A DNA stretch of 64,000 nucleotides from Ylistrum balloti (lineage: Eukaryota). A model generated the notes under the pieces. It worked only from the letters and a program-made list of their open reading frames with translations, was not told the DNA's origin and did no database searches. Location: the NCBI RefSeq assembly GCF_031769215.1, contig NW_026782949.1:1-64000 (forward strand), given 5' to 3'. The position numbers and the translations under genes are program-made. Positions 2,757 to 62,200 of the stretch are shown here, in pieces (within the stretch, counting starts at the first letter, position 1; each line of letters begins with the position of its first letter).

Positions 2757-2934
2757 GTTGATTTCGGTGTCTTTTGAAACATAATGCGTGTCTTTAGTGC
2801 AACCTAAGACATTAATTATCTAAATCAACACAAGAAAAAGACATATATCGATTAAAATGATTTACCATACGTAGTTGTTCAGGTATTGTCACAAACTACA
2901 TGTACAACAGATCCAAGCTGTGGTATATGATTCG

Positions 2935-3195
2935 GGCCGCGGTAGCCAAGTGGCCTTATCACTAAGCCTCCGTTATTCCCCCTGTGTCCGAGTATCGTCT
3001 CACCGACGAACGTCAGTGTTCTGGCGACGTCTAGGTCGGGAGTTGGAGGCCTACGTTGGGCAGGCGCCAGGTACTGGCCTCAGGTCGGTGTTTTTTTCCC
3101 TCCGGAAACTCTGTGTTTACTTCACCAACCAAATCTGTCACGTCCTTGAATGACCTTGACTATTAATAGAACGTAAAACAATAACAAACCAAACG
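2935..3195 (+). mobile_element. Probable tRNA-derived SINE
   Basis: GC-rich island starting GGGCCGCGGTAGCCAAGTGG (A-box-like) and ending in an A/C-rich simple tail (gtaaaacaataacaaaccaaac). B-box not clearly identified. Confidence 0.4.
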
Positions 3196-3740
3196 AGATC
3201 AGAAGAAGCGATTTGCATGAAGTGTATCTCTTTGTTACAGTTCCATAATCGCTGTAATCGTTCTGACCTCTATCCTTGTTGGAATTGGCGCACTTTTCTG
3301 TATTGGAGGTGTATGTTTCTGTTGCTATAAGAAATGTAGTGGTAAGTAGTGATCTTTGTACCGTCATATTATAGTGTTGATCTGTTAAGATAAATTAGGC
3401 GTTTCACGCAATAAGAAATATTGAAGAACAAATATATTATTTTGCTGAAAAAAAATCAAAATAGGTCTTCTTATGATAAAGTTGTTCCTTCGTAATACAA
3501 TCATTGTTAATTGGTATCAGCAGGGACGTTTAATATAGATTGTATTATACGTCCCTGGTATCAATGTTTTTTTTTATTTCTCTTAACTTTTCAAAATAGC
3601 TCACTCTATTTTTTTTGTTTCCATTAAAAAAATTATTTAAAAGTGGGATATATAATATGTTGATCAATATCACAGAAGATTTTGAAGTAAATTAAGGTTT
3701 TCTCCCTTTCTATTCTTGGTTTCAAAATGTAGGCTCTTAG

Positions 3741-5038
3741 CATCACTGACAGACCTAAAAGGACAAAACATCTGTATAAAGTACCATCATTGACAGTCCT
3801 AAAAGGACGAAACATCTGTATAAAGTACCATCATTGACAGTCCTAAAAGGACAAAACATCTGTATGATGTACCATCACTGACAGTCCTAAAAGGACAAAA
3901 CATCTGTATGATGTACCATCACTGACAGTCCTAAAAGGACAAAACATCTGTATGATGTACCATCACTGACAGTCCTATAAGGACAAAACATCTGTATGAT
4001 GTACCATCACTGACAGTCCTATAAGGACGAAACATCTGTATGATGTACCATCACTGACAGTCCTATAAGGCCGAAACATCTGTATGATGTACCATCACTG
4101 ACAGTCCTATAAGGACGAAACATCTGTATGATGTACCATCACTGACAGTCCTATAAGGACGAAACATCTGTATGATGTACCATCACTGACAGTCCTATAA
4201 GGACCAAACATCTGTATGATGTACAATCACTGACAGTCCTATAAGGCCGAAACATCTGTATGATGTACCATCACTGACAGTCCTATAAGGCCGAAACATC
4301 TGTATGATGTACCATCACTGACAGTCCTATAAGGACGAAACATCTGTATGATGTACCATCACTGACAGTCCTATAAGGCCGAAACATCTGTATGATGTAC
4401 CATCACTGACAGTCCTATAAGGCCGAAACATCTGTATGATGTACCATCACTGACAGTCCTATAAGGACGAAACATCTGTATGATGTACCATCACTGACAG
4501 TCCTATAAGGCCTATAAGGAAACATCTGTATGATGTACCATCACTGACAGTCCTATAAGGAAACACTGTATGATGTACCATCAAACATCTGTATGATGTA
4601 CCATCACTGACAGTCCTATAAGGACGAAACATCTGTATGATGTACCATCACTGACAGTCCTATAAGGACGAAACATCTGTATGATGTACCATCACTGACA
4701 GTCTTATAAGGACGAAACATCTGTATGATGTACCATCACTGACAGTCCTATAAGGACAAAACATCTGTATGATGTACCATCACTGACGAGTCCTAAAAGG
4801 ACGAAACATCTGTATGATGTACCATCACTGACAGTCCTATAAGGACAAAACATCTGTATGATGTATCATCACTGACAGTCCTATAAGGACCAAACATCTG
4901 TATGATGTACCATCACTGACAGTCCTATAAGGACGAAACATCTGTATGATGTACCATCACTGACAGTCCTATAAGGATGAAACATCTGTATGATGTACCA
5001 TCATTGACAGTCCTATAAGGACAAAACATCTGTATGAT
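3741..5038. repeat. 44-bp minisatellite array, ~29 copies
   Basis: Unit AAACATCTGTATGATGTACCATCACTGACAGTCCTATAAGGACG, period 44 (e.g. 4030 to 4074), with slippage irregularities at ~4500-4590. Confidence 0.97.
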
Positions 5039-5759
5039 TCAGTTTACTTCCTTATTTGGCTCTTCTTATCTAATTCTTCACTGAAAGATGTAGATCTCAC
5101 TTATGTGTCTTTTGCAAGTCAATCACTGTGAATGTAGTTCATGGAAGAATGTATGATATTGTACAATGTTACAGTATTTAAATAATACATTACCAATCTC
5201 AATATTTACGAACTCATTTTGCAATCCAAACAAATAAAACTTCAGGAATGTAAATTCATAGACCTTCATTTGCAAATCTTTTTTGGTGTGCAAATTTAAT
5301 TTTTTGAAATTAATGGCAAAAAATTTACACTTAACAAAAGTCGAGTTTTTCAAATACACAGGGAGAGTTGACAAGTATACAGTCTTCAGGAAAACACTTC
5401 TAATTACTGTATAAGCTTTGTATTGTTTTGACAGTATCTATTGTATATTACAGATGGCTGTTATGTGTAGGATGATGCGGTGCTGAATATATTGGATCAA
5501 TAATACCACCACCACTTGCCACCATTCATTTGTTTTGATACTGTTCTCATGATGCTTTCACCAAAGACATTCTATTGGTGAAATGAGTGTTTGGGGCAGG
5601 CCAAGAGATTTATGAATGAAAATGCACTTTGTGTGTAATGTCTTGTCATTTTGAGTGTTGTGAGTGTTTGAGTAATTTGAAAGTATCTTTAACTTTGATG
5701 ATATTGTGCTTGACCAAACATTCAGTTTCTCAAATGTTTAAATGTTTATTTTTAATAAT

Positions 5760-47853: not shown

Positions 47854-50800
47854 GTTGGATGATGTATTGCCAAAGTTAAGCAAGGCTAGATGTTTTAGCA
47901 AGCTAGATGTCAAGGATGCATATTGGCACGTGAGACTTGACGAGGAGTCTAGCAAGCTCACAACCATGATAACCCCTTTCGGTCGTTTTCGTTGGGCGAG
48001 ACTACCTTTCGGACTCAAGGTGTCCAGCGAAATTTTCCACAGGAAAATAACTGAAGCGTTAGGTGACTTAGATGGAGTCTTCACGATAGCGGACGACATC
48101 ATTGTAGCCGGTTGCGGAAGCGACGACTCAGCAGCTAATCGCGACAACGACCGGAAACTACGCTCTCTCTATAAGCGGTGTAAGGAGCAGAACATCACTC
48201 TAAATGAGGATAAAAAGGCTATTGGCCTACGTGAGATTTCATTCCATGGTCACTCGATAACCAGTGATGGTGTGAAGCCCGATGACAAGAAGATCAAGGC
48301 AATTATGGAGATGCCAGCTCCCGAGGATGTCTCTGGTGTGAAACGATTTTGCGGAGTTGTGCAATACATGGCCAAGTTTCTACCAGACCTCGCGATCACT
48401 TTGGAACCCATTCGTGCATTGACGCGCAAAGATGTGGAGTGGAACTGGTCTAAAGACTGTCAAACCGCGTTCGACGAAGTAAAGCGCAAACTCACGAAAG
48501 CACCCGTATTGGCTTATTTCGACGCCAACAAGGAAGTCGTTGTTCAGGTCGACAGTAGTCAACATGGAATTGGCGCCGTACTGATGCAATGTGGACAACC
48601 CATAGAATTTGCATCACGATCCCTAACGACATCTGAGCGAAACTGGGCACAGATAGAGAAGGAGGCCCTGGCAATACTTTTTGGTCTCGAGCGTTTTGAT
48701 CAGTACACGTATGGACGAGCCGTTACAATCCAAAATGATCACAAACCGTTAGCATCGATACTGAAAAAGCCACTGAGTGATGCGCCAAAACGACTACAGA
48801 ACATTCTAGTGCGTTTGAACCAATATGATTTCGAATTCCAATTTGTGAAAGGAATGAACCTGACCATTGCTGATGCGTTGAGCAGAGCTGAACTGGTTTC
48901 TGAAACTGAACCGCGACCGAGAATCATGTCTGTAAATGCTTTCAGTAACATTCCCGATGCAAGACTCGAGGAAGTTCGTGAGGCTACTGAAAAGGATCCT
49001 GGGATGCAGGAACTCGTATCATTGATTCTGTGTGGGTGGCCTAGTGACAAGGCTAGCGTTCCCGCTGCTGGGAGACCCTACTTTGATTTCTGCGACATGT
49101 TAGGATATCATGATGGTATTGTGATGAAAGGTGAATCCGTAGTGATCCTGCAATCGTTACGCGCGGACATGAAAGCCAGACTACATAGTGCTCATCTTGC
49201 CTATGACACGAGGCACCATATTTTGGCCCGGCATGGCCAAAGATATCAAGCAAATGGCAGATGCCTGCAAGGCATGTCAAGAACTCAAACCTAGTAACCC
49301 GCAGGAAAGCTTGAAACAACATACAGAGGGTACTCCATGGGAAAAGATCGGGACCGATTTGTTCGAAATTCAGGGGCGTAATTACATCGTCAGTGTTGAT
49401 TACTACTCCAACGACATTGAAGTCGAGCACCTGACGTCAACTACCTCGAACAAAGTAATAAATGTGCTGAAGAAGCAATTTGCCCGATTTGGTGTACCGT
49501 CGGAAATTGTATCGGACGGGGGACCTCAGTACTTCTCCCACGACTTTGCCAAATTTGTTAAATCCTGGGGAATCCATCACAAGGTCTCATCACCAAACTA
49601 CGCCAAGAGTAATGGCAAGGCAGAATCAGCCGTAAAGATCATCAAACATATGATGATTAAGTGCTTGCGCGATGGATCTGACCAATATGAAGCTCTTTTG
49701 GAACTGAGAAATACTCCAAGGCAGGACACTGGCAAGAGTCCTGCCGAAATGATGTTCGGACATTGTACGCGCACTATGTTGCCGTCAATACATCAAAAAC
49801 CGCGTGACGTCGAAGCTATGACCCGTAGACAGTCCCGTAGAGATATTGTCAAACGTAACTACGACAAGAAGTCTCGAGTACTCCCGAAACTGAGGAAAGG
49901 ACAGAATGTGTACTACAAGAAATTCCCGTCTGATATCTGGAGACAAGGAAAGATAATAGATGAAGTGGCTGATAGGTCGTACACGCTTCAAACTCCCAAT
50001 GGTGCGATTTATCGTAGAAATCGTGTTCATCTACGCACAACTACAGTGAACGTGAACATTCGTGATCACACGCCAACACGTCCAGTGAAAAGTGAGCCTA
50101 TCAAATTATCTCAATACGATGGTGTGGTCGTCAACAACGAGGATGTGGGCCGCAACGACTCGCGTGATGTCGATATCGGTACCAAGCAAACCGCGCCTGG
50201 AAACAATACTCCGATCGCGACCAGTGTTGGACAATCAGACACTCCGAGTGCACCCAAGGCCAAGCCTGGCATTATGCAATCATCACGACCAGCAAGGACA
50301 ATTCGCGAGCCAGCCTATTTGAAGGACTATGTGCGCTAGTGATGTGTGACTGATGCAATTCGATCCAGTTTTTACTTTTTAGGTGTTCCGGAACTGTGTT
50401 CAAGTTCAAGTGTTTAATTTTGTGTTAATGTTCAAAGAATTAATCTCATAAAGTAATGGTGTAATTCTGAACATTTTAGTTGTTAAAGGTTATAGAACTG
50501 TCTTTATACTGCTGCATCCAAAGACTACTGCTAGTAATATACTGGTGATAAGTTTTATACAATTTATTAAAGCCTCAAGAACTGTGCTAACAATAAGTGC
50601 CAAATTTGATGTCTATTTCCATTCTTAAAGAAAAGGGGATGTTGATGACATTTCGTTCCATATTAATTCCAAGATATATATATATGCATTCGTTCCGCAT
50701 AATTGTGACAGCCTCGCTAGGATACCAATCCCAATTTTGTGTCTACCTATGTGGTACCATGTGCTTCAGTCGAATACAGTAGATCATGGCGGCTACACGT

Positions 50801-50969: not shown

Positions 50970-51862
50970 TCTCGTAGATTACAAATGCAATTTAGTCTGT
51001 TATATCCAACTGTCAGCCATTATATTATCTTGGGAGCTCGAGTTCTGAATCTTCGTATTTAACATCTTTTGAGCTTGAGGTTTAAAAATAAATCACTTTG
51101 AAACACATTTTAAGGCTTTTCTTTTTTGTGTATTTTCTAAAACACAACGGTTTATCTGAGAATAGGTGATATACTTCACAATGTGTTATACGCACTATTT
51201 AATGTAACTTTGTTTGGTAACCTTGGCGACACATTCAAGCTTTGATGTTTGATTCACGGAGGGTTGATAATACCAAGAATAAAGGATTTTGTGTGGGTAT
51301 TATCGACCCACCTCCTTTCAAGGTCAGACGTTTTCAAACCAACTAATTTTCATTTGTAACTTAAAAACAATATTTGTACTATAGTGGTTTATGCAAACAT
51401 GAACAAACTATCTTTTAAATAATTGTAAAAGGGCCCACACGGTAATAGTTACCCGTTAACCCCCTCCGTAACGCCGACGTTGATCCAGACTTTCGCCGCT
51501 ACTCAACTTCGATCTAGGTTATTTCTGTGCAATTCAAAGCTCAAGACAAACTAATATAAAGACGAAAGATATTCCGAAAAAGTGTTTCTCGGCTATGTTG
51601 GGTGTTTGACAGGCATTGCAATGACCATGTGAATTTTAATGAAGCTTTTATGTGGGAAATGGTCGATAACACCATAATTTGCTCTAGTAAGTCTGTTATG
51701 TTTATGATTGTACTGGTCTGGGAATTTGGGGGAAGGGCGATAACTCTGTGAGTCACTTGCTGAACTCTTCAGAGTGTGAAGAGGGAAAAAGAAAAAGGAG
51801 AATACACGTGGTGTTGAGAACAAATGATGATTTTTTTTTATTTATGTGAAGTCGACACAACA

Positions 51863-51873
51863 TGGTGGAGAAT
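51863..51873 (+). other. Primer-binding site, tRNA-Ala-like
   Basis: TGGTGGAGAAT immediately after an ACA LTR end, complementary to the recalled tRNA-Ala 3' end (..ATTCTCCACCA). Confidence 0.6.
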
Positions 51874-52074
51874 CCAAACTGAGTCAGTATATTTCCCCAT
51901 TTATGTGTTTATGTTAGACTACCTGATTTATTGAGGTAAATGTTCATATCGGACGGTGTTTGCCCCTTTGAATGTTGCCAATTGTTTCGTCCCAGTATCA
52001 CCAGATCACTGAGTATAGTGTGAACATACATCCGACTGCCAATTTTCTGACTTTTGTTCTTTATCGCTGTCTTA

Positions 52075-52586
52075 ATGAACAGCAGGTGTATTTTACTAAG
52101 CGATTCCAGATTCGCTGGAGTTGGATAGAAGCCACAAACTATACATAATCTGTGTAGGTATTAATGACATACCAGATGATATCGGCAACTATTCCATCTG
52201 TGGGCGAAACACATGCTTTAGTTCTATAACTAAAACCATTTCGGACATTGAAAGTGAAATTCTCTGCCAAAATCCAACAGCTCTCATCTTATTTGGCACA
52301 ATCCCCCCCAAAAATTTACAATCTACAATCTACTGTAACAACAAACCATCAACAGTCATTTGAGGATTTTGTATCAAGACTTAATGCATTTATTGGTGAA
52401 TTTAATTGTGCCCATACAGGAGTTCATTTACCCCTCCATACACAGCTGCACATTCATCGGTCACGTGGTAGAACGTCCCATTTTTCCTATTATAACCTGT
52501 ATGATGGTATTCATCCACGACACTGTCTACCAAGACTTTGGGAGGTGAAAGTGTTGGAGGTTTATCACAGATTGTTGAACATTTAA
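52075..52586 (+). pseudogene. SGNH/GDSL hydrolase (esterase)-like ORF, degraded
   Basis: Block I MNSRCILLSDSR (52075), block III YIICVGIND (~52157), block V LYDGIHP (52503-52517). Block II deleted, two frameshifts. Confidence 0.7.
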
Positions 52587-52800
52587 AGTGTTGAAAGCCC
52601 ACAGGCCGACATAGGTTGCAAGCCCACCACCCATCAGTAATTGTTCTTGAGTATGTGTTTGAATTGTTTACACAGAGCAGTTAAATGTTGAAAGCCCACC
52701 GGCCGACATAGCTCTATGTACAGGCACTGCAGTTGTTATTATGTTTTAAGATTTAACAGACCAACAATATAATGCAACAAATGTAACGTCAACATTTGTC

Positions 52801-54040
52801 ATGAGCTGAATATCTCCAGAACCTATTATTGACTCAGATGTTGATAATGATACAGACACAAATGATATAGACACATGTGGTATTCTTGATGATGATTTTT
52901 TAGACCAACATCAACTTTCTATTGACCCCCATACCAATTCTGACATTACATCTGTATTTTGCAATCCTCAATCATTTTCAAGTGTCTTTACAAGTGACAA
53001 TTTCTCAGATGTTTCACTGTCAGACCTACATGGGTTACATTTCTCAGCAGACAATTTTTATGACACTTCCTGTCCTGACCTAAATGAACATACTTCTTTA
53101 AATTCTTTGAGTTTCAGTATGGCAAAGTCAATACCTTGTTAAAAATTCACTGGGTATCCCCATGAAAATGGAGAAAAGTTTCTAAATGAATTTGATTCCT
53201 TCGCTACATTGATAAATGTTGATTCCTCTCCATGGAAGATAGCCGCGTTTCATCTTCATTAACAAGGCCCGGCCCTTACTTGGTGTAATAATCTTATCAA
53301 AACAGAAAGCAACCTGGGATACAGTGTTGGAAGCATTTAAGAACAGATTCCTCACACTAGACTGGCAGAATCCCCACATGCTCTCTGAAAGTGCCAATTT
53401 CCAAGCTTTGAGACTCCTTCCAGGACAACCAATAGAGGATTTCTATGGCCTTGTTCTTGAAAAGGGCAAAATGATGAACAAGTCAGAAAATGAACTAATG
53501 GCTAAATTTATAACTGGCTTGCCAACGGAGTTAGCAGTGTATGTTGGCACTGGTTCTCCAACAACTTTAGACCAGGCATTATCCAAAGCAAAAATGGCGG
53601 AGAGTTGTGGAGCAAGGGCGGACAACCCAGTTTGTGCTGTTACATCACCAAAACCACGTCCATCTGAAATAGAAGAACTTAAAATTCAAGTTAAATCCTT
53701 AACAGAAATGGTGTCAGTGTTAACCATGGAGAAGCGGACACATTCCCAGCCACGTCTACCTCATGCAGCTAGAACTCATAGTTCAAATCAGGATGATCAG
53801 AGGGAATGTTTTACCTGCTATGGTATTGGCCACCTACGTAGACAATGCAACTGGACTGGAGTTGGTGAGTCCGCCTCTGGCATTCAGTGTCAGATCTGCT
53901 TTCAGTTTGGGCACCCAGCGTTCCAGTGCCGCCAATTCCTGCCACCTCAGCAACGGCCCTTTTCTCACAGTGACCATCACCGGGGAAACTACAACAACCT
54001 GAGGAGAGATCGACTCAGCTCCTCAGGACCCCGAAAGTAA
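52801..54040 (+). pseudogene. Gypsy gag with acidic N-terminal extension and two zinc knuckles
   Basis: D/S-rich segment 52801-53120, a capsid-like region with stops, CFTCYGIGHLRRQC and CQICFQFGHPAFQC. Confidence 0.75.
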
Positions 54041-55939
54041 ATACAGCCAATATGGGGTCAACCTCTAACGATGTAGAGCATCATGCTGCGTCTTCCACAA
54101 CCAGACCACAATTTCTTTTCCTTCCTGTAACTATCAATAACATTAAAATTTCAGAGCTTTTGGACACGGGCAGCTCCTTAAATATTATCAGTGAGGATTT
54201 CTTTTCACATATACCTGAAACATTTAAATTTGCATTTGAAATCTCTGAAAATAGTGAAGTAACTCTTGCAAACAATCAGGCTATAACTCTCATTGGTACA
54301 GCAACTATTCGTGTGAATGTGTTGGGCAACACCCACAATATACCAGTTCACATCTTGGCATCAACATCTCATCCTTTGATTTTAGGAACTGACTATTTAC
54401 AAGAAAAAGGTGTTATCCTAGACTTTTCTCAGCATTCCTATTCATTTGGACAATATTCTGTCAGATGCCTACATAGAACCACTATACCTGAAAATTCAGA
54501 AATGGTAATTTGGGGAAAAGTTCCTAACCACGTACTGTATTAATCCCAGGGAATTTGTACAGGTTGTACATATAGTTCCCACCAGCATCTTTTGATTGCG
54601 ATGACGTTAGTGACAGTTTCTCGTGAAAACTCTGTTCCAATCAAAATTATGAACTTTTCTTGAGGGAAAGACTCTAGCTCACTTTACTTACACATCAATA
54701 GATGATGAGAGTTCTCGGTTATCAGATAATTTTGTTCAAAATATCCGGTTAACCTCCACTAAGGACAACAAATCAGAGAGTTACTTTTCCCACTTTGATA
54801 TGCCTGATCATTTGTCTCCACAAGACCAGTCACAGCTCAAAGCTCTCTTATGGAAACATAACTGTTTGTTACTGCTGATTCACCTGATTTAGGTTACACC
54901 GATGTTGTCACTCACAGGATAATCTTAAAGCCGGATGCCAAACGTACTGTATGAATCCCAGGGAATTTGTACAGGTTGTAATCTTAAAGCCGGATGCCAA
55001 ACCAAAACATCAATCACCATACAGACTTTCCCCTGACAAAAGAGAAGTTTTACGGCACCAGCTGGATGAACTCTTGCACCAAGAAATCATAGCACCAGTT
55101 AATGAGGCAGAGGAAATTATTATAACAAGCCCTGTGGTTCTTGTTTCAAAGCGAGGTAAAGGCAGTAAACCTACGAAACCAATCACTAAGGATTCAAGTC
55201 TTTCACAATTTCGTTTTTGCGTTGATTTCAGATTTGGAAACAAATTAGAAAGGGAAGTATTTTCAGATTTTTTTCAAATGATGGATCCATGCTTCCAAAA
55301 GACAATCACAGAAATTCATGAAAATTATCCACTGAATCATCACATTTTCAAAATGCTTCAGTCCTCTTACCAAAACATCATTTTAATTATTTATTTAGAA
55401 TAACTTTAGGATAACAGTTTAGAAGTTGAAAATTTCGAGTCAGTAATTCCTCCTTCTGTATCAGAAGAGGATGATGCAGTCATCTTTAAAGCCAGTGTAA
55501 GTGAACTATTTTTCATCTAACCAGACTCAAGTGTAGAGTAATCATCATGTTCTGTTTTCTCAAAAAAAATATTGTTTACAATTTGTCAGGATGTGACAAT
55601 CTGTAGCTGAATGAAAGATAGATCAATATCAAATATTCGGAATCAAGCTTAAATATAATACACACTGTCAGTAATAGTATAAACCTTAGTTATTATAGGC
55701 ATATTAGTCAAAGCAAAACTTCTTAAACATGCTTTCTAGCTCACCAGAACTTGGTCCTTTTAGCATAGAAAATTTATTTTAAAAAGTTGATATTGTTTCT
55801 GATTAATGTCAAGATATGTGTCATGTTGAAACTATGAAGCTACAAGTGAGTTCTGTACTATGTTATATTGACAACTTTCTTCCCTTACGCGAGATATTAT
55901 TGGTTGCTGACAAAAGCAATAACAACGTCATCACCCAGC

Positions 55940-57711: not shown

Positions 57712-59246
57712 ATGGCGACCAACGCCGTAACTTCTGTGTTGTCAGCTTTAGAAATGGATGAAGACGATGATAATTTCAAAGTAGATGAATTAGTAGGTGT
57801 GGCAATGGCTGCATATTGTGCTTGCTGGTAAGTTTCATTCACTGTGTCGTAAGTGAATCAAACTAGATTGTTTTTCGTCCTATCTAAGATAGTACGTTGC
57901 ATCTTCCCGTTGTCGACACACAACATTTCTATCACGCTAGAACCACCAGCAACATGATTTTTCTGACAGACAATTAAACGACACGCAGTGTTCGGACTAC
58001 AAAAAGAGATAATTTACAATTTTCACATGTGGCATTTACATGATATTCTAATAAAATTTATTTATTTATCCCAAAACGCAGGGCTACCATACATAAATAA
58101 TAATCAATAGATTCTTGATTGATATTCATCAGTCTCCATATATTATATCACTACACACTTCATAAAAATTTTGATACAGATTCAGGGCGTTGTGTTTATT
58201 GTAAAGTTAAGTTGATTTTTTTTTATTTCAATTTCAGTGTTGTGAGAGAGCCAAGGTCAAGGATTTTGAATTATGCTGATACTGTAATACCAGAGTACAA
58301 CGAGACAGAGTTTCGACGAATGTTTCGTTTGTCTCGAGAAACCTTTCAGAAAATGAGTAGCTATCTTAAAGATTGCCCGGAGCTAGTAGTTGGTGGAACT
58401 GGTGCACAAGAGCCTATTGCAGTTGAAAAACAGTTATATGTGACATTGTGGTACCTTGGTGGTTCAGATAGCATAATTAAAATAGCTGACAGATTTGGGA
58501 TATCCGAGTCATCAGTGGTTTTATGTAGAAGACGGATTATTGATGCAATATTGAAAAATTTAAAACGCAAATTTATTTCTTGGCCGAAAAATCAATCTAT
58601 GCAGGAAACTGTGGACAAATTTGAACAACGTAATGGATTTCCAGGCATTGAAGGCTCCCTGGATGGAACTCATATTCCAATACGTGCACCAAAAGAGAAT
58701 GCTCAGACATATGTCAACAGGAAAAGGTTCCATTCTCTTCACCTTCAGGCTGAGTGTAATTCAGAAATGATCTTCACAGATTGTTTTGCAGGATACCCTG
58801 GTAGCTGCCACGATGCAAGGGTGTTGCGCAATTCTGACCTGTGGGAGAATGGTTTATTATTGTGTAACGGCAATCATATAATTGCTGATGGCGCTTATCC
58901 CCTTCGTAGATGGCTCTTGACACCATTTAGAGATAATGGACATCTCGCATATCAACAAAAGAATTTCAATTACATGCTGTCTGCAAACAGAGTTGTGATA
59001 GAAAGAGCATTCGGCTTACTGAAAGGCAGATTTAGGCGACTAAATTATCTGGATACTCAAAGTATTAAAACTGCGGTGAAAATAATAATGGTATCATGTG
59101 TTTTGCATAACATTTGTTTAATCCACAACGATGAATATGATGATTACTTGGAAATAGATCCAGCACTAGACTGTCCCCAACAACAAGCCATGCATATGCA
59201 TGAAAATGACAATAAACAGGGTTCGACACTAGCGGTAGCCCGGTAG
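57712..59246 (+). CDS. PIF/Harbinger (HARBI1-like, DDE_Tnp_4) transposase, 2 exons, C-terminus replaced by hAT insertion
   Basis: Exon 57712-57827 (GT donor) joins exon 58238- in phase. Motifs SLDGTH, GSCHDARV, IADGAYP and VIERAFGLLKGRFRRL are intact. Native sequence ends at 59216. Confidence 0.9.
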
Positions 59247-62200
59247 CCCGGGGCTACCAAAATAACTGACGGGCTACCAAAGATCCCATACCCAGTAGCC
59301 CGGCGGGCTACCAAATCTTTTAAAATATACCAATTCAGTATACCCACATTTATTTAACGAATTCGTCCGTGTTTGGTCGTCAAAACTAAATCTAAATGTA
59401 GAACCATCCCGTTCACATTATTTACGTCTTGCGTCATTTCAAGCGTGTTTTGGAGTATCTCACAGCGTCATTCGGGCGTTTGAATTTCTAGCTATCTTCC
59501 GCTGAGCACGGAAAGCGCTAGATTGACAGCGAGAACTTCTGACATTTCCAATCATGGCTTCCATGTGGCGGTGGCTGGACGGCACCCCTCCTCCTAAGAA
59601 GCTAAAGAAGACGAAGACGTCACCAGAGGAAAGCGTCACAAAAAAGGCATTGCAATATGAAGCGGTCAGACAGAGGACTTTCCAGTCGAACTGGAAAATT
59701 AACTATAATTGGTTAATTTTTCATGACGGGAAAATGTACTGTCGGGTATGTCAAAAGTACGACAGTAGCAATAGTAATAATTTCGTGAAAGGGACAAATA
59801 ATTTCAGGCTTGATCCAATAAAAAAACACGACCAGTCAGACAGTCACCGTAGGTCAGTTTTGAAGGAAAAGGCAGTTACATCAATGCCAGGAACATCAAA
59901 AGCTGAAAAAACACTTGTGATGATGAACAAGGCTGCAGTGGGGAAATTATGTACATTGTTTAGAAACGCTCATTTTGTAGCAAAGTCAAGAAGGCCTTTC
60001 ACAGACTTTGTTAAGTTGTGTGACTTGGATCAGGCCAAGGGTACTCAGATAGGAAACGCATACAGGACAGATAAATACTGCCAACATTTCATAGCTGCCA
60101 TTGCTGACACTCGCAGACATGAGCAGAAGGAACTGGTGGAGAAAGCCCCTTTCCTTAGTATTATTTCTGATGGAGCCACAGACTGTGCATCAAAGGAAAC
60201 AGAAATAGTCTACCTACGGTCATCGTTCATGTGCAAGGTATTCATTTATATTTTCACGATGTCTTTCGCCCAGTTTGAAATTCCAGATGATCACGTGATG
60301 TACTTGCAAATTTTGACTGTCTCCTATCAAAACAATACATGCTTGTTTCCAAGCTGAGAATGTAAAGTTTGAACATAATGCTAATCTTTGACATTTTTGC
60401 ATATATCAGATGTTGTAATTATGAAAATAGTCCATTAAGTACTTCAATGTTTACCACAAAACAGTTAGTTAAAGAAAATGACCAAAGTTTAATGATTTAG
60501 TAACTTTAATTTCTTGTCTTACTTATGACCAATTATTATCTTGATAATTCTAAAAAAAAAAAAGAATCACTTCTTTTGTCTCTTAATATAGGTATCTACC
60601 TTCTTTGCTGGTCTGAAACATGTAGGAAAAGCCGATGCACCTAACATCACGAGGGCAATTTCTTCCTTATTAGATAGGAGGTTTGGGGACTCATGGAGAA
60701 AAAAAATTGTGGCAATGGGTACGGATGGTGCGTCAGTTATGTTGGGGAAGAAAAGTGGTGTAGTGGTCAGGATGGCGGAGGAAACAGAACGACCATATTT
60801 GAAAGCCATACATTGTTCTGCTCATAGGCAAGTGCAAATAATTGATCATTGAATTTTAAAAGAATTGTATAGTAAGTCTCTCAGTATACATAAGGTAGCT
60901 TCAAGTAATCTGCAGTCTTTGTGATCAATGTTATTTTTATGGAATATAAAAAAAAGGAATAGATTTTTTTACAGATCTGAACTACTTTTGCAACTTTGAA
61001 AGTTTGTTTATACAAAATATAGTTTCCTTTCTTTTTTGACCTTAGGTTAGAGTTGGCATATAAGGACTCCATCAAAGACATCCCAATACATCAAAAGTGT
61101 GAGCTTCTCCTGACCAACTTGTATTTATTTTACAAGTGAGTAGTTAATTATAACTGGCTTAAAATAATAGACATTACTTTTTGAGTGTAGAATAAAGTAA
61201 TTATACCAATTGTAACAGTTACCATAGGTACATTCATAGTAAGTACTGCAGTACCACATGATGATTGAATCTGATTTTCATTTCAAAAACATGCTACCCA
61301 AAGGTGTGATTAAAAGTGTTACACCTGCTAAATCATAACCACTTGGCCACATGTCCCTTAATTTTATAAGCTAGCAATGCTGCATGTACAGTCTAGTATT
61401 TTGATTTTGTATAAATGATTTCATAACGTTCTCCTCTTCTGACTGTTTTTTTCCAGATACAGCCCTTTAAACAGGAGCAATTTGAAACTGGCTGCCGAGT
61501 CAATTGGGAAAAAAGCCTATGTACCATCACGCACAGGAGGGACCAGGTGGTTACCGCACACTAAACGTGCTTTGCAGAATTTTAAAGCTGGATCAGAAAG
61601 CATTGTCCTTCATCTTGAGCAGGTAATTATGATCACACCTATCTTACAAAGGTGTTGTCTGTCATCAAAGTCTGCTATTTCTTGTATTATGTTCCAGGAA
61701 CAGTTCATTATGTAGGGTAAGATTTTAAGTTAGATTAGTAGTTGAATATGTAATTACATGTGGTATATTATAATTATGTCTAAGATGGAAAGATTGAAAA
61801 CTATCTACAACTGTTGTTCATTCTTTTAGTCATATTCCTATAATGAAATAATTATATTCATGTTGTCTTGACTTTGTAAAATGACCTTAGCTGTTGAATG
61901 ATAAGACTAAAGTCCCATAAATTAAACTAATGATAATGTGTCAATTGAAATCACAGATGCAACAAAATCCATCCAAGGAAGCTAGTGCCAAAGCCCGCAA
62001 CTTCCTGAAAGTGATAAAGGAAAAGCAAACAGACTACTGGATGCATCTCATGATGGATGTAGTAAACACCCTCAGCTACCTTTCACAGGCCATACAGGAA
62101 AGGGAGAGCACAACCGCGGATATAACCATGGAAATAGAATGTGTCCTTTTAACACTGAAAAAGTACAAAACAAGGTACTTGATCCTTGACAGTGTCTTGC

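What the first reader, a model, noticed from the sequence alone, without database searches (positions are those of the whole stretch)
51424..55240. Gypsy LTR retrotransposon carrying an SGNH esterase gene between PBS and gag
The order LTR end, tRNA-Ala-like PBS (51863), SGNH ORF (DS, GxND and DGIH motifs), acidic segment, gag, protease, RT places the hydrolase inside the element. SGNH/esterase domains are established in ORF1 of some non-LTR elements (CR1/L2/RTEX) and in Ngaro tyrosine-recombinase elements. I do not know them as a standard part of Gypsy elements. This could be an under-described lineage with a lipid- or membrane-active accessory protein, or a domain transferred between retroelement classes. 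This copy is decayed.
Basis: partly seen in the sequence, partly recalled or inferred. Interest (0 to 1): 0.72.

Follow-up and report, generated by a model that had tools for sequence, protein, structure and literature searches.

The report
Scallop Gypsy retrotransposon with esterase gene
The window holds a broken copy of a young Gypsy-type jumping gene that, in better-preserved copies and in another scallop, carries its own conserved esterase gene in front of gag; this is an unusual position for an accessory gene type previously reported only behind pol in rotifer elements.

Summary
The window copy runs from 51694 to 55233, not from 51424. It is a decayed copy, cut off at the start of RT, of a Ty3/Gypsy family.

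Two full-length copies elsewhere in the genome (contigs C531 and C702) have 175-178 bp LTRs. Their layout is LTR, 13-nt tRNA-Ala PBS, open 206-aa ORF, spacer, gag, PR, dUTPase-like domain, RT, RNase H, IN.

The 5' ORF is an SGNH/GDSL hydrolase:
- Pfam hits are weak.
- The AlphaFold model matches only SGNH esterases (Z up to 15).
- The catalytic Ser, Gly, Asn, Asp and His residues are conserved.

The ORF is part of the element, not a secondary insertion:
- Diverged families in this genome keep the same order, as do two contigs from a king-scallop gill metagenome.
- The ORF diverges at about the rate of gag.
- dN/dS between subfamilies is about 0.2.

A 21-nt hairpin-forming motif, found in this genome only in these elements, is repeated in the ORF-gag spacer of every family.

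GDSL genes in Gypsy-like elements are already published (rotifer Vesta, as ORF3 after pol). Accessory ORFs before gag are also known (Drosophila MDG1 group). I therefore class this as a new variant of a known kind.

The esterase's role is inferred and untested. Earlier notes of this scan report the same ORF-before-gag layout, and a related esterase gene in AcademH transposons, elsewhere in this genome.

The parts
51694..51862 (+). 5' LTR, TG...CA, about 169 bp with small deletions relative to the other copies.
   Evidence: It aligns to both LTRs of the C531 and C702 copies. Similarity stops at 51694.
51863..51875 (+). Primer-binding site, 13 nt complementary to the 3' end plus CCA of host tRNA-Ala(AGC).
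   Evidence: 17 tRNA-Ala genes ending ...GGATTCTCCA were found in this genome. The same PBS occurs in family B and in scallop contig L053.
51876..52074 (+). Leader between the PBS and the esterase start codon. It contains a GAG|GTAAAT donor-like site.
   Evidence: The splice site is a guess with no RNA data behind it.
52075..52586 (+). Broken remnant of the SGNH/GDSL esterase ORF0 (206 aa in the open copies).
   Evidence: Translations are. It aligns to the open ORF L011:2864-3484, with deletions of about 72 and 33 bp and frame changes.
52587..52800 (+). ORF0-gag spacer with two copies of the conserved 21-nt hairpin motif, at 52590-52610 and 52687-52707.
   Evidence: The motif occurs in every family and in both scallop contigs. 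There are only 11 exact hits in the 648-Mb genome, all in these spacers.
52801..54040 (+). gag: acidic N-terminal part, capsid, two CCHC knuckles. It is broken in its first half and open from 53324.
   Evidence: Pfam hits are Ty3_capsid/Retrotrans_gag/zf-CCHC on the open copy and zf-CCHC on the window piece.
54052..55233 (+). 5' part of pol: aspartic protease, a dUTPase-like region and the first residues of RT. It has a stop at 54543 and a 39-bp duplication. The copy ends at 55233.
   Evidence: No similarity to the family is found further downstream in the window.

Best explanation
The window holds a dead, 3'-truncated copy of a recently active Ty3/Gypsy LTR retrotransposon family of a scallop.

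The family's layout is: LTR, tRNA-Ala PBS, ORF0, spacer with 1-5 copies of a conserved hairpin motif, gag, PR, dUTPase-like domain, RT, RNase H, IN, LTR.

ORF0 encodes a soluble, basic protein of about 24 kDa with an SGNH/GDSL fold. It has a complete catalytic set: Ser in DSR, Gly, Asn in GIND, and Asp/His in DGxH. It has no signal peptide and no membrane span.

Shown:
- The gene is an integral part of the element lineage, inherited vertically and kept under purifying selection.

Inferred:
- It is translated as the 5'-proximal cistron of the full-length RNA.
- It acts inside the cell as an esterase or lipase on an acyl-ester substrate, most likely membrane lipid, helping particle assembly, trafficking or cell-to-cell passage. 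This parallels what is proposed for the ORF1p esterase of L2/CR1 LINEs and the GDSL ORF3 of rotifer Vesta elements.
- The spacer hairpins serve gag translation or RNA packaging.
For: Element structure:
- Two full-length copies exist. The C531 LTRs differ only in a T-run, and the copy has a 4-bp CTAT target duplication. The C702 LTRs differ by 2 substitutions.
- ORF0 and gag are open in both, and the pol domains are in Gypsy order.

SGNH identity:
- Pfam Lipase_GDSL E=5.6e-4. Five of eight relatives hit the GDSL families, the best at 1.2e-5.
- The AlphaFold model has pLDDT 71. All top Foldseek hits are GDSL/SGNH enzymes, and VIA gives Z 15.2 over 171 of 206 residues.
- The protein atlas also points to GDSL.
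- Catalytic residues are conserved across 14 sequences.

Integral to the element and under selection:
- The order ORF0 then gag is kept in subfamily A2, families B and D, the more distant family C, and scallop-metagenome contigs L052 and L053, which share the PBS.
- Identity to family A is similar for ORF0 and gag: 45-48% versus 42-48% for family B, and 52-61% versus 46-48% for the scallop contigs.
- dN/dS between A and A2 is 0.18-0.20 at dS about 1.1.

Protein properties: pI 9.5, no hydrophobic span, catalytic Ser at residue 11.

Spacer motif.
Against: - No RNA data exist for this organism in the run index, so neither expression nor the way gag is translated behind a 620-nt ORF has been observed.
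- Pfam scores are below the curated cut-off (20.6 versus 23.6 bits).
- The model is weakest (pLDDT below 50) around the Asp/His loop.
- Enzyme activity and substrate are untested.
- Copy number of the family is low: three copies of family A.
- Family D and the window copy have lost most or part of ORF0, so it is not needed once a copy is inserted.
- Family C has Cys in place of the oxyanion Asn, which hints that catalysis may not be the conserved property across the wider protein family.
Confidence: 0.8

Rival explanations
1. ORF0 is a passenger: a host SGNH gene or a LINE ORF1 fragment that was inserted secondarily into one element, with no role for the element.
For: - LTR elements do capture host fragments.
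- The window copy and the C36 copy (L045) have lost much of the ORF.
- Within-family copies evolve about neutrally.
Against: - The ORF sits at the same place and in the same orientation in at least five diverged families and in a second scallop-derived data set.
- It diverges in step with gag.
- dN/dS between subfamilies is 0.18-0.20.
- Catalytic residues are kept.
- No LINE RT/EN, coiled coil or knuckle is attached, and all near relatives are stand-alone 200-300-aa proteins.
Confidence: 0.05
2. ORF0 protein works mainly as a non-catalytic partner, such as a nucleic-acid or acidic-lipid binding chaperone that helps gag, with the SGNH fold serving only as a scaffold.
For: - The protein is strongly basic, with pI 9.1-9.5.
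- A family-specific basic motif HRSRGR is conserved.
- The related family C replaces the oxyanion Asn by Cys.
- The L2 ORF1p esterase was discussed as a membrane- or lipid-binding module (PMC3905857).
Against: Ser, Gly, Asn, Asp and His are all conserved in the A/B-type proteins across species. That conservation is hard to explain without catalysis.
Confidence: 0.15
3. ORF0 is a counter-defence or host-manipulation enzyme that removes an acyl or acetyl mark from a host molecule, and does not help particle or membrane steps.
For: - This suits a generic host-directed function.
- Structural neighbours include sialate and peptidoglycan O-acetyl esterases and transferases.
Against: There is no direct evidence and no known target. 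Structural neighbours of SGNH proteins are not substrate-specific.
Confidence: 0.15

Closest known systems
Vesta LTR retrotransposons of bdelloid rotifers with GDSL esterase/lipase ORF3 (Rodriguez, Kenefick and Arkhipova 2017, PMC5408684)
   Same: - Both are retrovirus-like Gypsy-type elements with a stand-alone GDSL/SGNH accessory gene that lacks TM or coiled-coil segments.
- In both, the catalytic residues are intact.
- Vesta has a dUTPase between PR and RT. Here a dUTPase-like domain is likely at the same place.
- In both cases related esterase genes also occur in another class of mobile element.
   Different: - In Vesta the gene is ORF3, downstream of pol. Here it is the first ORF, between PBS and gag.
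- The hosts differ: bivalve molluscs versus rotifers.
- No spacer hairpin repeats are described for Vesta.
- Sequence kinship between the two esterases was not tested, because no Vesta sequence could be reached.
Esterase domain of ORF1p in CR1, L2 and RTEX non-LTR retrotransposons (Kapitonov and Jurka 2003; ZfL2-1 structure 4c1b, PMC3905857)
   Same: Both have an SGNH fold encoded upstream of the polymerase gene of a retroelement, with a proposed link to lipids and membranes.
   Different: - The LINE esterase is a domain of a multi-domain ORF1p with a coiled coil. Here the protein is stand-alone and followed by a true gag.
- The LINE esterase gave no sequence match (E up to 10) and is not among the 50 best structural matches.
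sORF1/sORF2 upstream of gag in Drosophila MDG1-group Gypsy elements (bioRxiv 10.1101/2025.03.14.642691)
   Same: Both are accessory ORFs placed between the 5' LTR and gag, in sense orientation, on the full-length transcript. The sORFs are thought to act at membranes.
   Different: The sORFs are 70-110 aa: a helix-turn-helix-like protein and a FAST-like transmembrane fusogen. They are not enzymes and are unrelated in fold.
SGNH gene of AcademH-type DNA transposons in this same genome
   Same: The proteins belong to the same family (26-27% identity, same motifs). Both are stand-alone ORFs of 230-240 aa.
   Different: The carrier is a DNA transposon. The gene lies head-to-head with a RecQ-like helicase and next to a THAP gene.

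Membership tests
Ty3/Gypsy (Metaviridae) LTR retrotransposon | Paired LTRs with TG...CA ends and a target-site duplication. | tested here: met
   The C531 copy has LTRs of 175/178 bp with 0 substitutions and a CTAT duplication. The C702 copy has LTRs with 2 substitutions, and its flanks share CACCATC at a 3-nt offset. The window copy keeps only the 5' LTR.
Ty3/Gypsy (Metaviridae) LTR retrotransposon | tRNA primer-binding site next to the 5' LTR and a purine tract before the 3' LTR. | tested here: met
   The PBS gives a 13-nt match to host tRNA-Ala(AGC). GGCGGGGA lies directly before the 3' LTR.
Ty3/Gypsy (Metaviridae) LTR retrotransposon | gag with a capsid and CCHC knuckle, and pol in the order PR-RT-RNase H-IN. 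| tested here: met
   Pfam hits on the C531 copy and on L052/L053. In the window only gag, PR and the first residues of RT remain.
SGNH/GDSL hydrolase superfamily | Four or five conserved blocks with catalytic Ser (block I), Gly (II), Asn (III) and Asp-x-x-His (V). | tested here: met
   DSR, G28, GIND and DGxH are conserved in 14 sequences of the A/B type. In the wider family C, the Asn is replaced by Cys.
SGNH/GDSL hydrolase superfamily | Three-layer alpha/beta/alpha flavodoxin-like SGNH fold. | tested here: met
   The AlphaFold model has pLDDT 71 and pTM 0.75. All top Foldseek and VIA matches are SGNH enzymes, with Z up to 15.2.
SGNH/GDSL hydrolase superfamily | Score above Pfam's curated cut-off for Lipase_GDSL or Lipase_GDSL_2. 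| tested here: not met
   20.6 bits versus a cut-off of 23.6, and 17.6 versus 32.9. Relatives reach E=1.2e-5, and some public relatives carry precomputed PF00657/PF13472 hits.
SGNH/GDSL hydrolase superfamily | Esterase, lipase or acyltransferase activity. | not testable with these tools
   This needs a protein assay.
LINE ORF1p esterase (CR1/L2/RTEX type) | Esterase as a domain of ORF1p, with coiled coil, PHD or knuckles, upstream of an RT-endonuclease ORF2. | tested here: not met
   The ORF is stand-alone at 206 aa and is followed by a Gypsy gag and pol. It has no match to 4c1b.
Vesta-type GDSL accessory gene | GDSL ORF located after pol (ORF3). | tested here: not met
   Here the ORF lies between the PBS and gag in every copy and family examined.
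Vesta-type GDSL accessory gene | dUTPase domain between PR and RT. | tested here: inconclusive
   Pfam dUTPase hits are below the cut-off at the same place in two diverged elements (17.7 and 20.1 bits versus 22). The model is low-confidence (pLDDT 54), yet its 50 best Foldseek matches are all dUTPases, at E 6e-3 to 6e-2. A profile search of the PDB was blank.
Vesta-type GDSL accessory gene | Sequence kinship of the esterase with Vesta/Athena GDSL ORFs. | not tested
   No Vesta sequence could be reached with these tools.

The most novel reading that the evidence does not exclude
ORF0 and the hairpin-repeat spacer form a conserved two-gene expression and packaging module of a molluscan Gypsy lineage. 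The esterase belongs to a large, unnamed family of stand-alone SGNH-like genes: more than 1100 cluster representatives in public data, and at least 55 loci of the C type in this genome. On this reading the family is a shared accessory gene of unrelated mobile elements (Gypsy, AcademH DNA transposons, perhaps LINEs). That would point to a common lipid- or acyl-dependent step, or a common host barrier, in the spread of mobile DNA in marine invertebrates.
Probability: 0.3. Interest if true: 0.75.

Novelty: new variant of a known kind. Interest (0 to 1): 0.55.

Why it matters
LTR retrotransposons are usually described as gag plus pol, sometimes with env. This lineage has kept a probable enzyme gene in front of gag through family and species divergence.

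Relatives of that gene also sit in a DNA transposon of the same genome. This adds to the rotifer evidence that esterases are a recurring accessory of mobile elements, and it offers a tractable case for asking what an esterase does for a retroelement.

The first-cistron position also poses a clear translation problem: how gag is made behind a 620-nt ORF. The conserved spacer hairpin is a concrete candidate for the answer.

Tried and rejected
Searches that gave nothing or could not run:
- The word-based protein search with ORF0 found nothing. The exhaustive HMM search was then used.
Two stretches fetched were mis-placed and wasted, and no more loci could be cut out.
- Two genome-contig scans, for contaminant contigs in clam-symbiont MAGs, found nothing.
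- No RNA run is indexed for this sequence, so read laying was not used and expression and splicing are untested.
- An Rfam scan of the leader and spacer was blank.
- A profile search of the PDB with the dUTPase-like region was blank, as was a PDB search with the chromo-like tail.

Checks that weakened or rejected an idea:
- A 14-nt PBS pattern also hit two chance sites, which I first took for extra copies and then rejected.
- Donor- and acceptor-like splice sites flanking ORF0 were looked at. The acceptors are not clearly conserved, so this stays a guess.
- Covariation support for the hairpin is modest: one pair shows CG/UG/UA, and 42 of 500 shuffles do as well.
- The tree of 148 relatives shows a well-supported A/B-type clade but no reliable rooting, so no direction of transfer is claimed.
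Full report
**What is in the window**

Translation of 51864-53330 in three frames shows pieces of an SGNH-type protein: LLSDSRF, ICVGINDIPDD, GTIPPK and YDGIHP. The pieces are spread over all three frames. They are followed by a gag with two CCHC knuckles (open from 53324 to 54040) and an aspartic protease (54052-54543).

A DNA search of the window's own genome (648 Mb, 1372 contigs) found two much better copies on contigs C531 and C702, at 91-97% identity. It also found a diverged subfamily on C425 and C255 at about 69% identity.

**The family's full-length copies**

I fetched both full-length copies.

| Copy | Position | LTRs | Flanks |
|---|---|---|---|
| C531 | 117476-125683 | 175/178 bp, differing only in the length of a T run | 4-bp CTAT duplication |
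| C702 | 901507-909672 | 2 substitutions between LTRs | share CACCATC at a 3-nt offset |

The family was therefore active very recently.

In the C531 copy the ORFs on one strand are (coordinates in L011):
- a 206-aa ORF, 2864-3484
- gag, 3839-5080 (Ty3_capsid, Retrotrans_gag, zf-CCHC)
- protease, 5092 onward
- RT/RNase H
- integrase (Integrase_H2C2, rve)
- a tail with a faint chromodomain hit

Both full-length copies have ORF0 and gag open. Both have at least one interruption in pol: in C531 an in-frame stop and a frame change, in C702 a frame change.

**Borders of the window copy**

Aligned to these copies, the window element begins at 51694, not 51424, and the LTR ends at 51862. The copy stops at 55233, which corresponds to the first residues of the RT domain. 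Nothing further downstream in the window belongs to it.

The window copy has the following damage:
- two deletions in ORF0, of about 72 and 33 bp, with frame changes
- loss of one spacer repeat
- a stop in the third codon of gag
- a 39-bp duplication in pol

**Primer-binding site**

The sequence after the LTR, TGGTGGAGAATCC, is complementary over 13 nt to the 3' end plus CCA of tRNA-Ala(AGC). At least 17 genes ending ...CCCGGATTCTCCA are present in this genome. A longer 14-nt pattern hit only the three family copies plus two chance sites.

**Is ORF0 an SGNH hydrolase?**

Sequence evidence alone is weak but consistent:
- Pfam Lipase_GDSL gives E=5.6e-4 at 20.6 bits, below the 23.6-bit cut-off.
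- Five of eight relatives hit the two GDSL families, the best at 1.2e-5.
- A profile search of the PDB lists GDSL-like proteins among its best but non-significant hits.
- The protein atlas places it next to GDSL clusters.

Structure evidence is clear:
- An AlphaFold model built with eight natural relatives has pLDDT 71.4 and pTM 0.75.
- Foldseek's significant matches are all GDSL/SGNH enzymes.
- The second-look aligner gives Z 15.2 to 12.6 for fifty SGNH entries, covering 157-195 of 206 residues.

In an alignment of 14 proteins of this type, the following are invariant or nearly so:
- block I Asp-Ser-Arg
- the block II Gly
- block III Gly-Ile-Asn-Asp
- block V Asp-Gly-x-His

The protein is 23.7 kDa with pI 9.5. 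It has no hydrophobic span, and its catalytic Ser is at residue 11, which leaves no room for a signal peptide.

**Is ORF0 part of the element?**

A six-frame protein search of the genome found open relatives at 66-67% identity (C255, C425), at 46-49% (C125, C865, C515), and more distant ones. Where flanking DNA was available, the order is the same:

| Family / source | What was seen |
|---|---|
| C425 | ORF0, gag, PR, RT, IN |
| C865 and C515 (family B) | ORF0 then gag. LTR ends (TGTTATGTTTAT...) and PBS (TGGTGGAGAATCT) clearly related to family A |
| C36 (family D) | a short ORF0 remnant before gag |
| C103 (family C, 19% identity) | an SGNH-like ORF directly followed by a PNMA/Gypsy-type gag |

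A scan of metagenome contigs found two contigs, NSIT01000199.1 and NSIT01000246.1. Their project is a gill-tissue metagenome of the king scallop, Pecten maximus (PMC5772249). Both carry ORF0 (broken), spacer, gag and a long pol. One also has the same tRNA-Ala PBS. Their best DNA match in the window's genome is only 72%, so they come from another species.

Identity to family A is similar for ORF0 and gag:

| Compared with family A | ORF0 | gag |
|---|---|---|
| Family B | 45-48% | 42-48% |
| Scallop contigs | 52-61% | 46-48% |
| Subfamily A2 | 68-70% | 59-74% |

Between subfamilies A and A2, ORF0 has dN/dS of 0.18-0.20 at dS about 1.1. Copies within a family differ almost neutrally, as expected after insertion. 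This is the pattern of a gene inherited with the element and selected during its spread. It is not the pattern of a secondary insertion.

**Wider protein family**

The word-based protein search was blank. I therefore ran the exhaustive profile search. It found 1108 cluster representatives at E<=1e-3 and 396 at E<=1e-10. All 150 listed are stand-alone proteins of 91-314 aa, most of them 200-300 aa. By best match, the top 150 divide as follows:
- 17 are of the Gypsy A/B type
- 104 are of the C type
- 29 are of a type found next to a helicase

Almost none carries a name. Two are labelled as proteins of clam-symbiont MAGs, most likely host contamination.

The C type alone has at least 55 loci in this genome, many of them open. 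A FastTree of 148 sequences gives a well-supported clade for the A/B type but no trustworthy root.

**A conserved spacer motif**

Between the ORF0 stop and the gag start, every family has 1-5 copies of GTYGAAAGCCCACCGGCCRAC on the sense strand. In families A, A2 and D the first copy starts 3-6 nt after the stop codon.

The exact 18-nt core occurs 11 times in the genome, all in these spacers, against zero for the reversed control.

The motif can fold as a 4-bp stem, an AAA bulge, a 3-bp stem and a 4-nt loop. Evidence on the fold is as follows:
- Variation sits in the loop (CACC, CACA, CCCC, CAAC) and in one stem pair that reads C-G, U-G or U-A.
- 92.6% of cells pair, against at most 47% when the partners are slid.
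- 42 of 500 shuffles do as well.
- The minimum-energy fold of the C531 spacer forms this hairpin at two of its three copies.

Rfam has no match. I take the motif to be a real, lineage-specific element whose function is open. Packaging or gag translation are guesses.

**How gag is expressed behind ORF0 is unknown**

Donor-like sites (GAG|GTAAAT, TAG|GTAAGT, CAT|GTGAGT) lie in the leader of three families. AG sites lie before gag, but the acceptors are not clearly conserved. No RNA run is indexed for this sequence.

**dUTPase-like domain**

Between PR and RT, Pfam dUTPase hits fall just below the cut-off at the same place in the C531 copy and in the scallop contig L052 (17.7 and 20.1 bits against 22). 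A model of this segment is low-confidence (pLDDT 54), yet its 50 best Foldseek matches are all dUTPases, at E 6e-3 to 6e-2. A profile search of the PDB was blank. The domain is likely but not settled.

**Comparison with what is known**

- GDSL/SGNH accessory genes in Gypsy-like LTR elements were described in bdelloid rotifers. Vesta elements carry a GDSL ORF3 after pol and a dUTPase between PR and RT, and related GDSL ORFs occur in Penelope-like Athena/Terminon elements. The authors suggest a role at membranes but found no activity data (PMC5408684).
- Esterase domains in ORF1p of CR1/L2/RTEX LINEs are known, with one crystal structure (4c1b, PMC3905857). That structure appears in neither my sequence nor my top structural matches.
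- Accessory ORFs upstream of gag are known in the Drosophila MDG1 group, where sORF2 is a FAST-like membrane protein (bioRxiv 10.1101/2025.03.14.642691).
- Paper searches for an SGNH/GDSL ORF before gag, or in bivalve LTR elements, found nothing. Only open-access text was searched, and Repbase could not be consulted.

**Earlier notes of this scan**

Another first-stage note reports an SGNH/GDSL ORF upstream of gag in a Gypsy element on another piece of this genome (s1-240682).

A followed-up note reports an AcademH DNA transposon of this 'scallop' genome with an SGNH gene head-to-head with its RecQ-like helicase (s1-238037). I saw the same block independently in four loci: helicase, SGNH-like ORF of 232 aa, and a THAP gene.

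Another note mentions a LINE whose ORF1 includes an SGNH esterase (s1-244242). I could not fetch it.

**Verdict**

The gene is an integral, selected part of a scallop Gypsy lineage. The kind of gene is already known from rotifer elements, but its position as first cistron, its bivalve hosts and the conserved spacer hairpins are new as far as I could check. The biochemical role is inferred only.

Noticed in passing
window 52590-52610 and 52687-52707; L011:3488-3508, 3588-3608, 3685-3705; L052:1746-2006 (five copies); L053:1470-1607 (three copies): A 21-nt motif, GTYGAAAGCCCACCGGCCRAC, is repeated in the esterase-gag spacer of every family and of the king-scallop contigs. It is found nowhere else in the genome. 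It can form a bulged hairpin with one covarying pair. Its function is unknown.
   Followed up: partly
L011:5515-5780 (C531 copy), L052:3844-4075; window about 54470-54740: A likely dUTPase-like domain lies between protease and RT. Pfam hits fall just below the cut-off in two diverged elements, and a low-confidence model's best 50 fold matches are all dUTPases. Rotifer Vesta, Juno and TelKA elements have the same arrangement.
   Followed up: partly
L037 (G000:C570:36343-39855), L038 (C825), L042 (C129), L043 (C36): A multi-copy block consists of a RecQ-like DEAD/Helicase_C gene, a divergently oriented open SGNH-like ORF (232 aa, 26-27% identical to the Gypsy ORF0) and a THAP-domain ORF. There are two subfamilies at 68% identity with dN/dS about 0.07.
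   Followed up: partly
L044 (G000:C103:705558-708914) and at least 55 further loci listed: There is a large, diverse family of open SGNH-like ORFs (about 240 aa, with block III reading GTCDL, so Cys replaces the oxyanion Asn). In L044 one is directly followed by a PNMA/Gypsy-type gag. This type makes up most of the 1108 public relatives. Whether its carrier is a full Gypsy element could not be checked.
   Followed up: partly
window 47855-50339: The RT-RNase H-integrase part of a different Gypsy element lies upstream on the same strand. It has no SGNH match, and no LTR pair was found within 36-56 kb of the window.
   Followed up: partly
window 58119-59246 and 59554-60357: A PIF/Harbinger-type transposase ORF (DDE_Tnp_4, E=1.7e-37) is followed by an ORF with a C17orf113-type zinc finger (E=1.9e-13).
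   Followed up: no
L024:2158-3149 (G000:C125): One family-B copy carries an insertion of about 990 bp between the esterase ORF and gag. The insertion is absent from the C865 and C515 copies.
   Followed up: no
P0169, P0173 (public proteins): Two relatives of the esterase are filed as hypothetical proteins of 'Candidatus Thiodiazotropha' MAGs (lucinid clam symbionts). They are most likely host clam retrotransposon DNA binned into the bacterial genomes.
   Followed up: no
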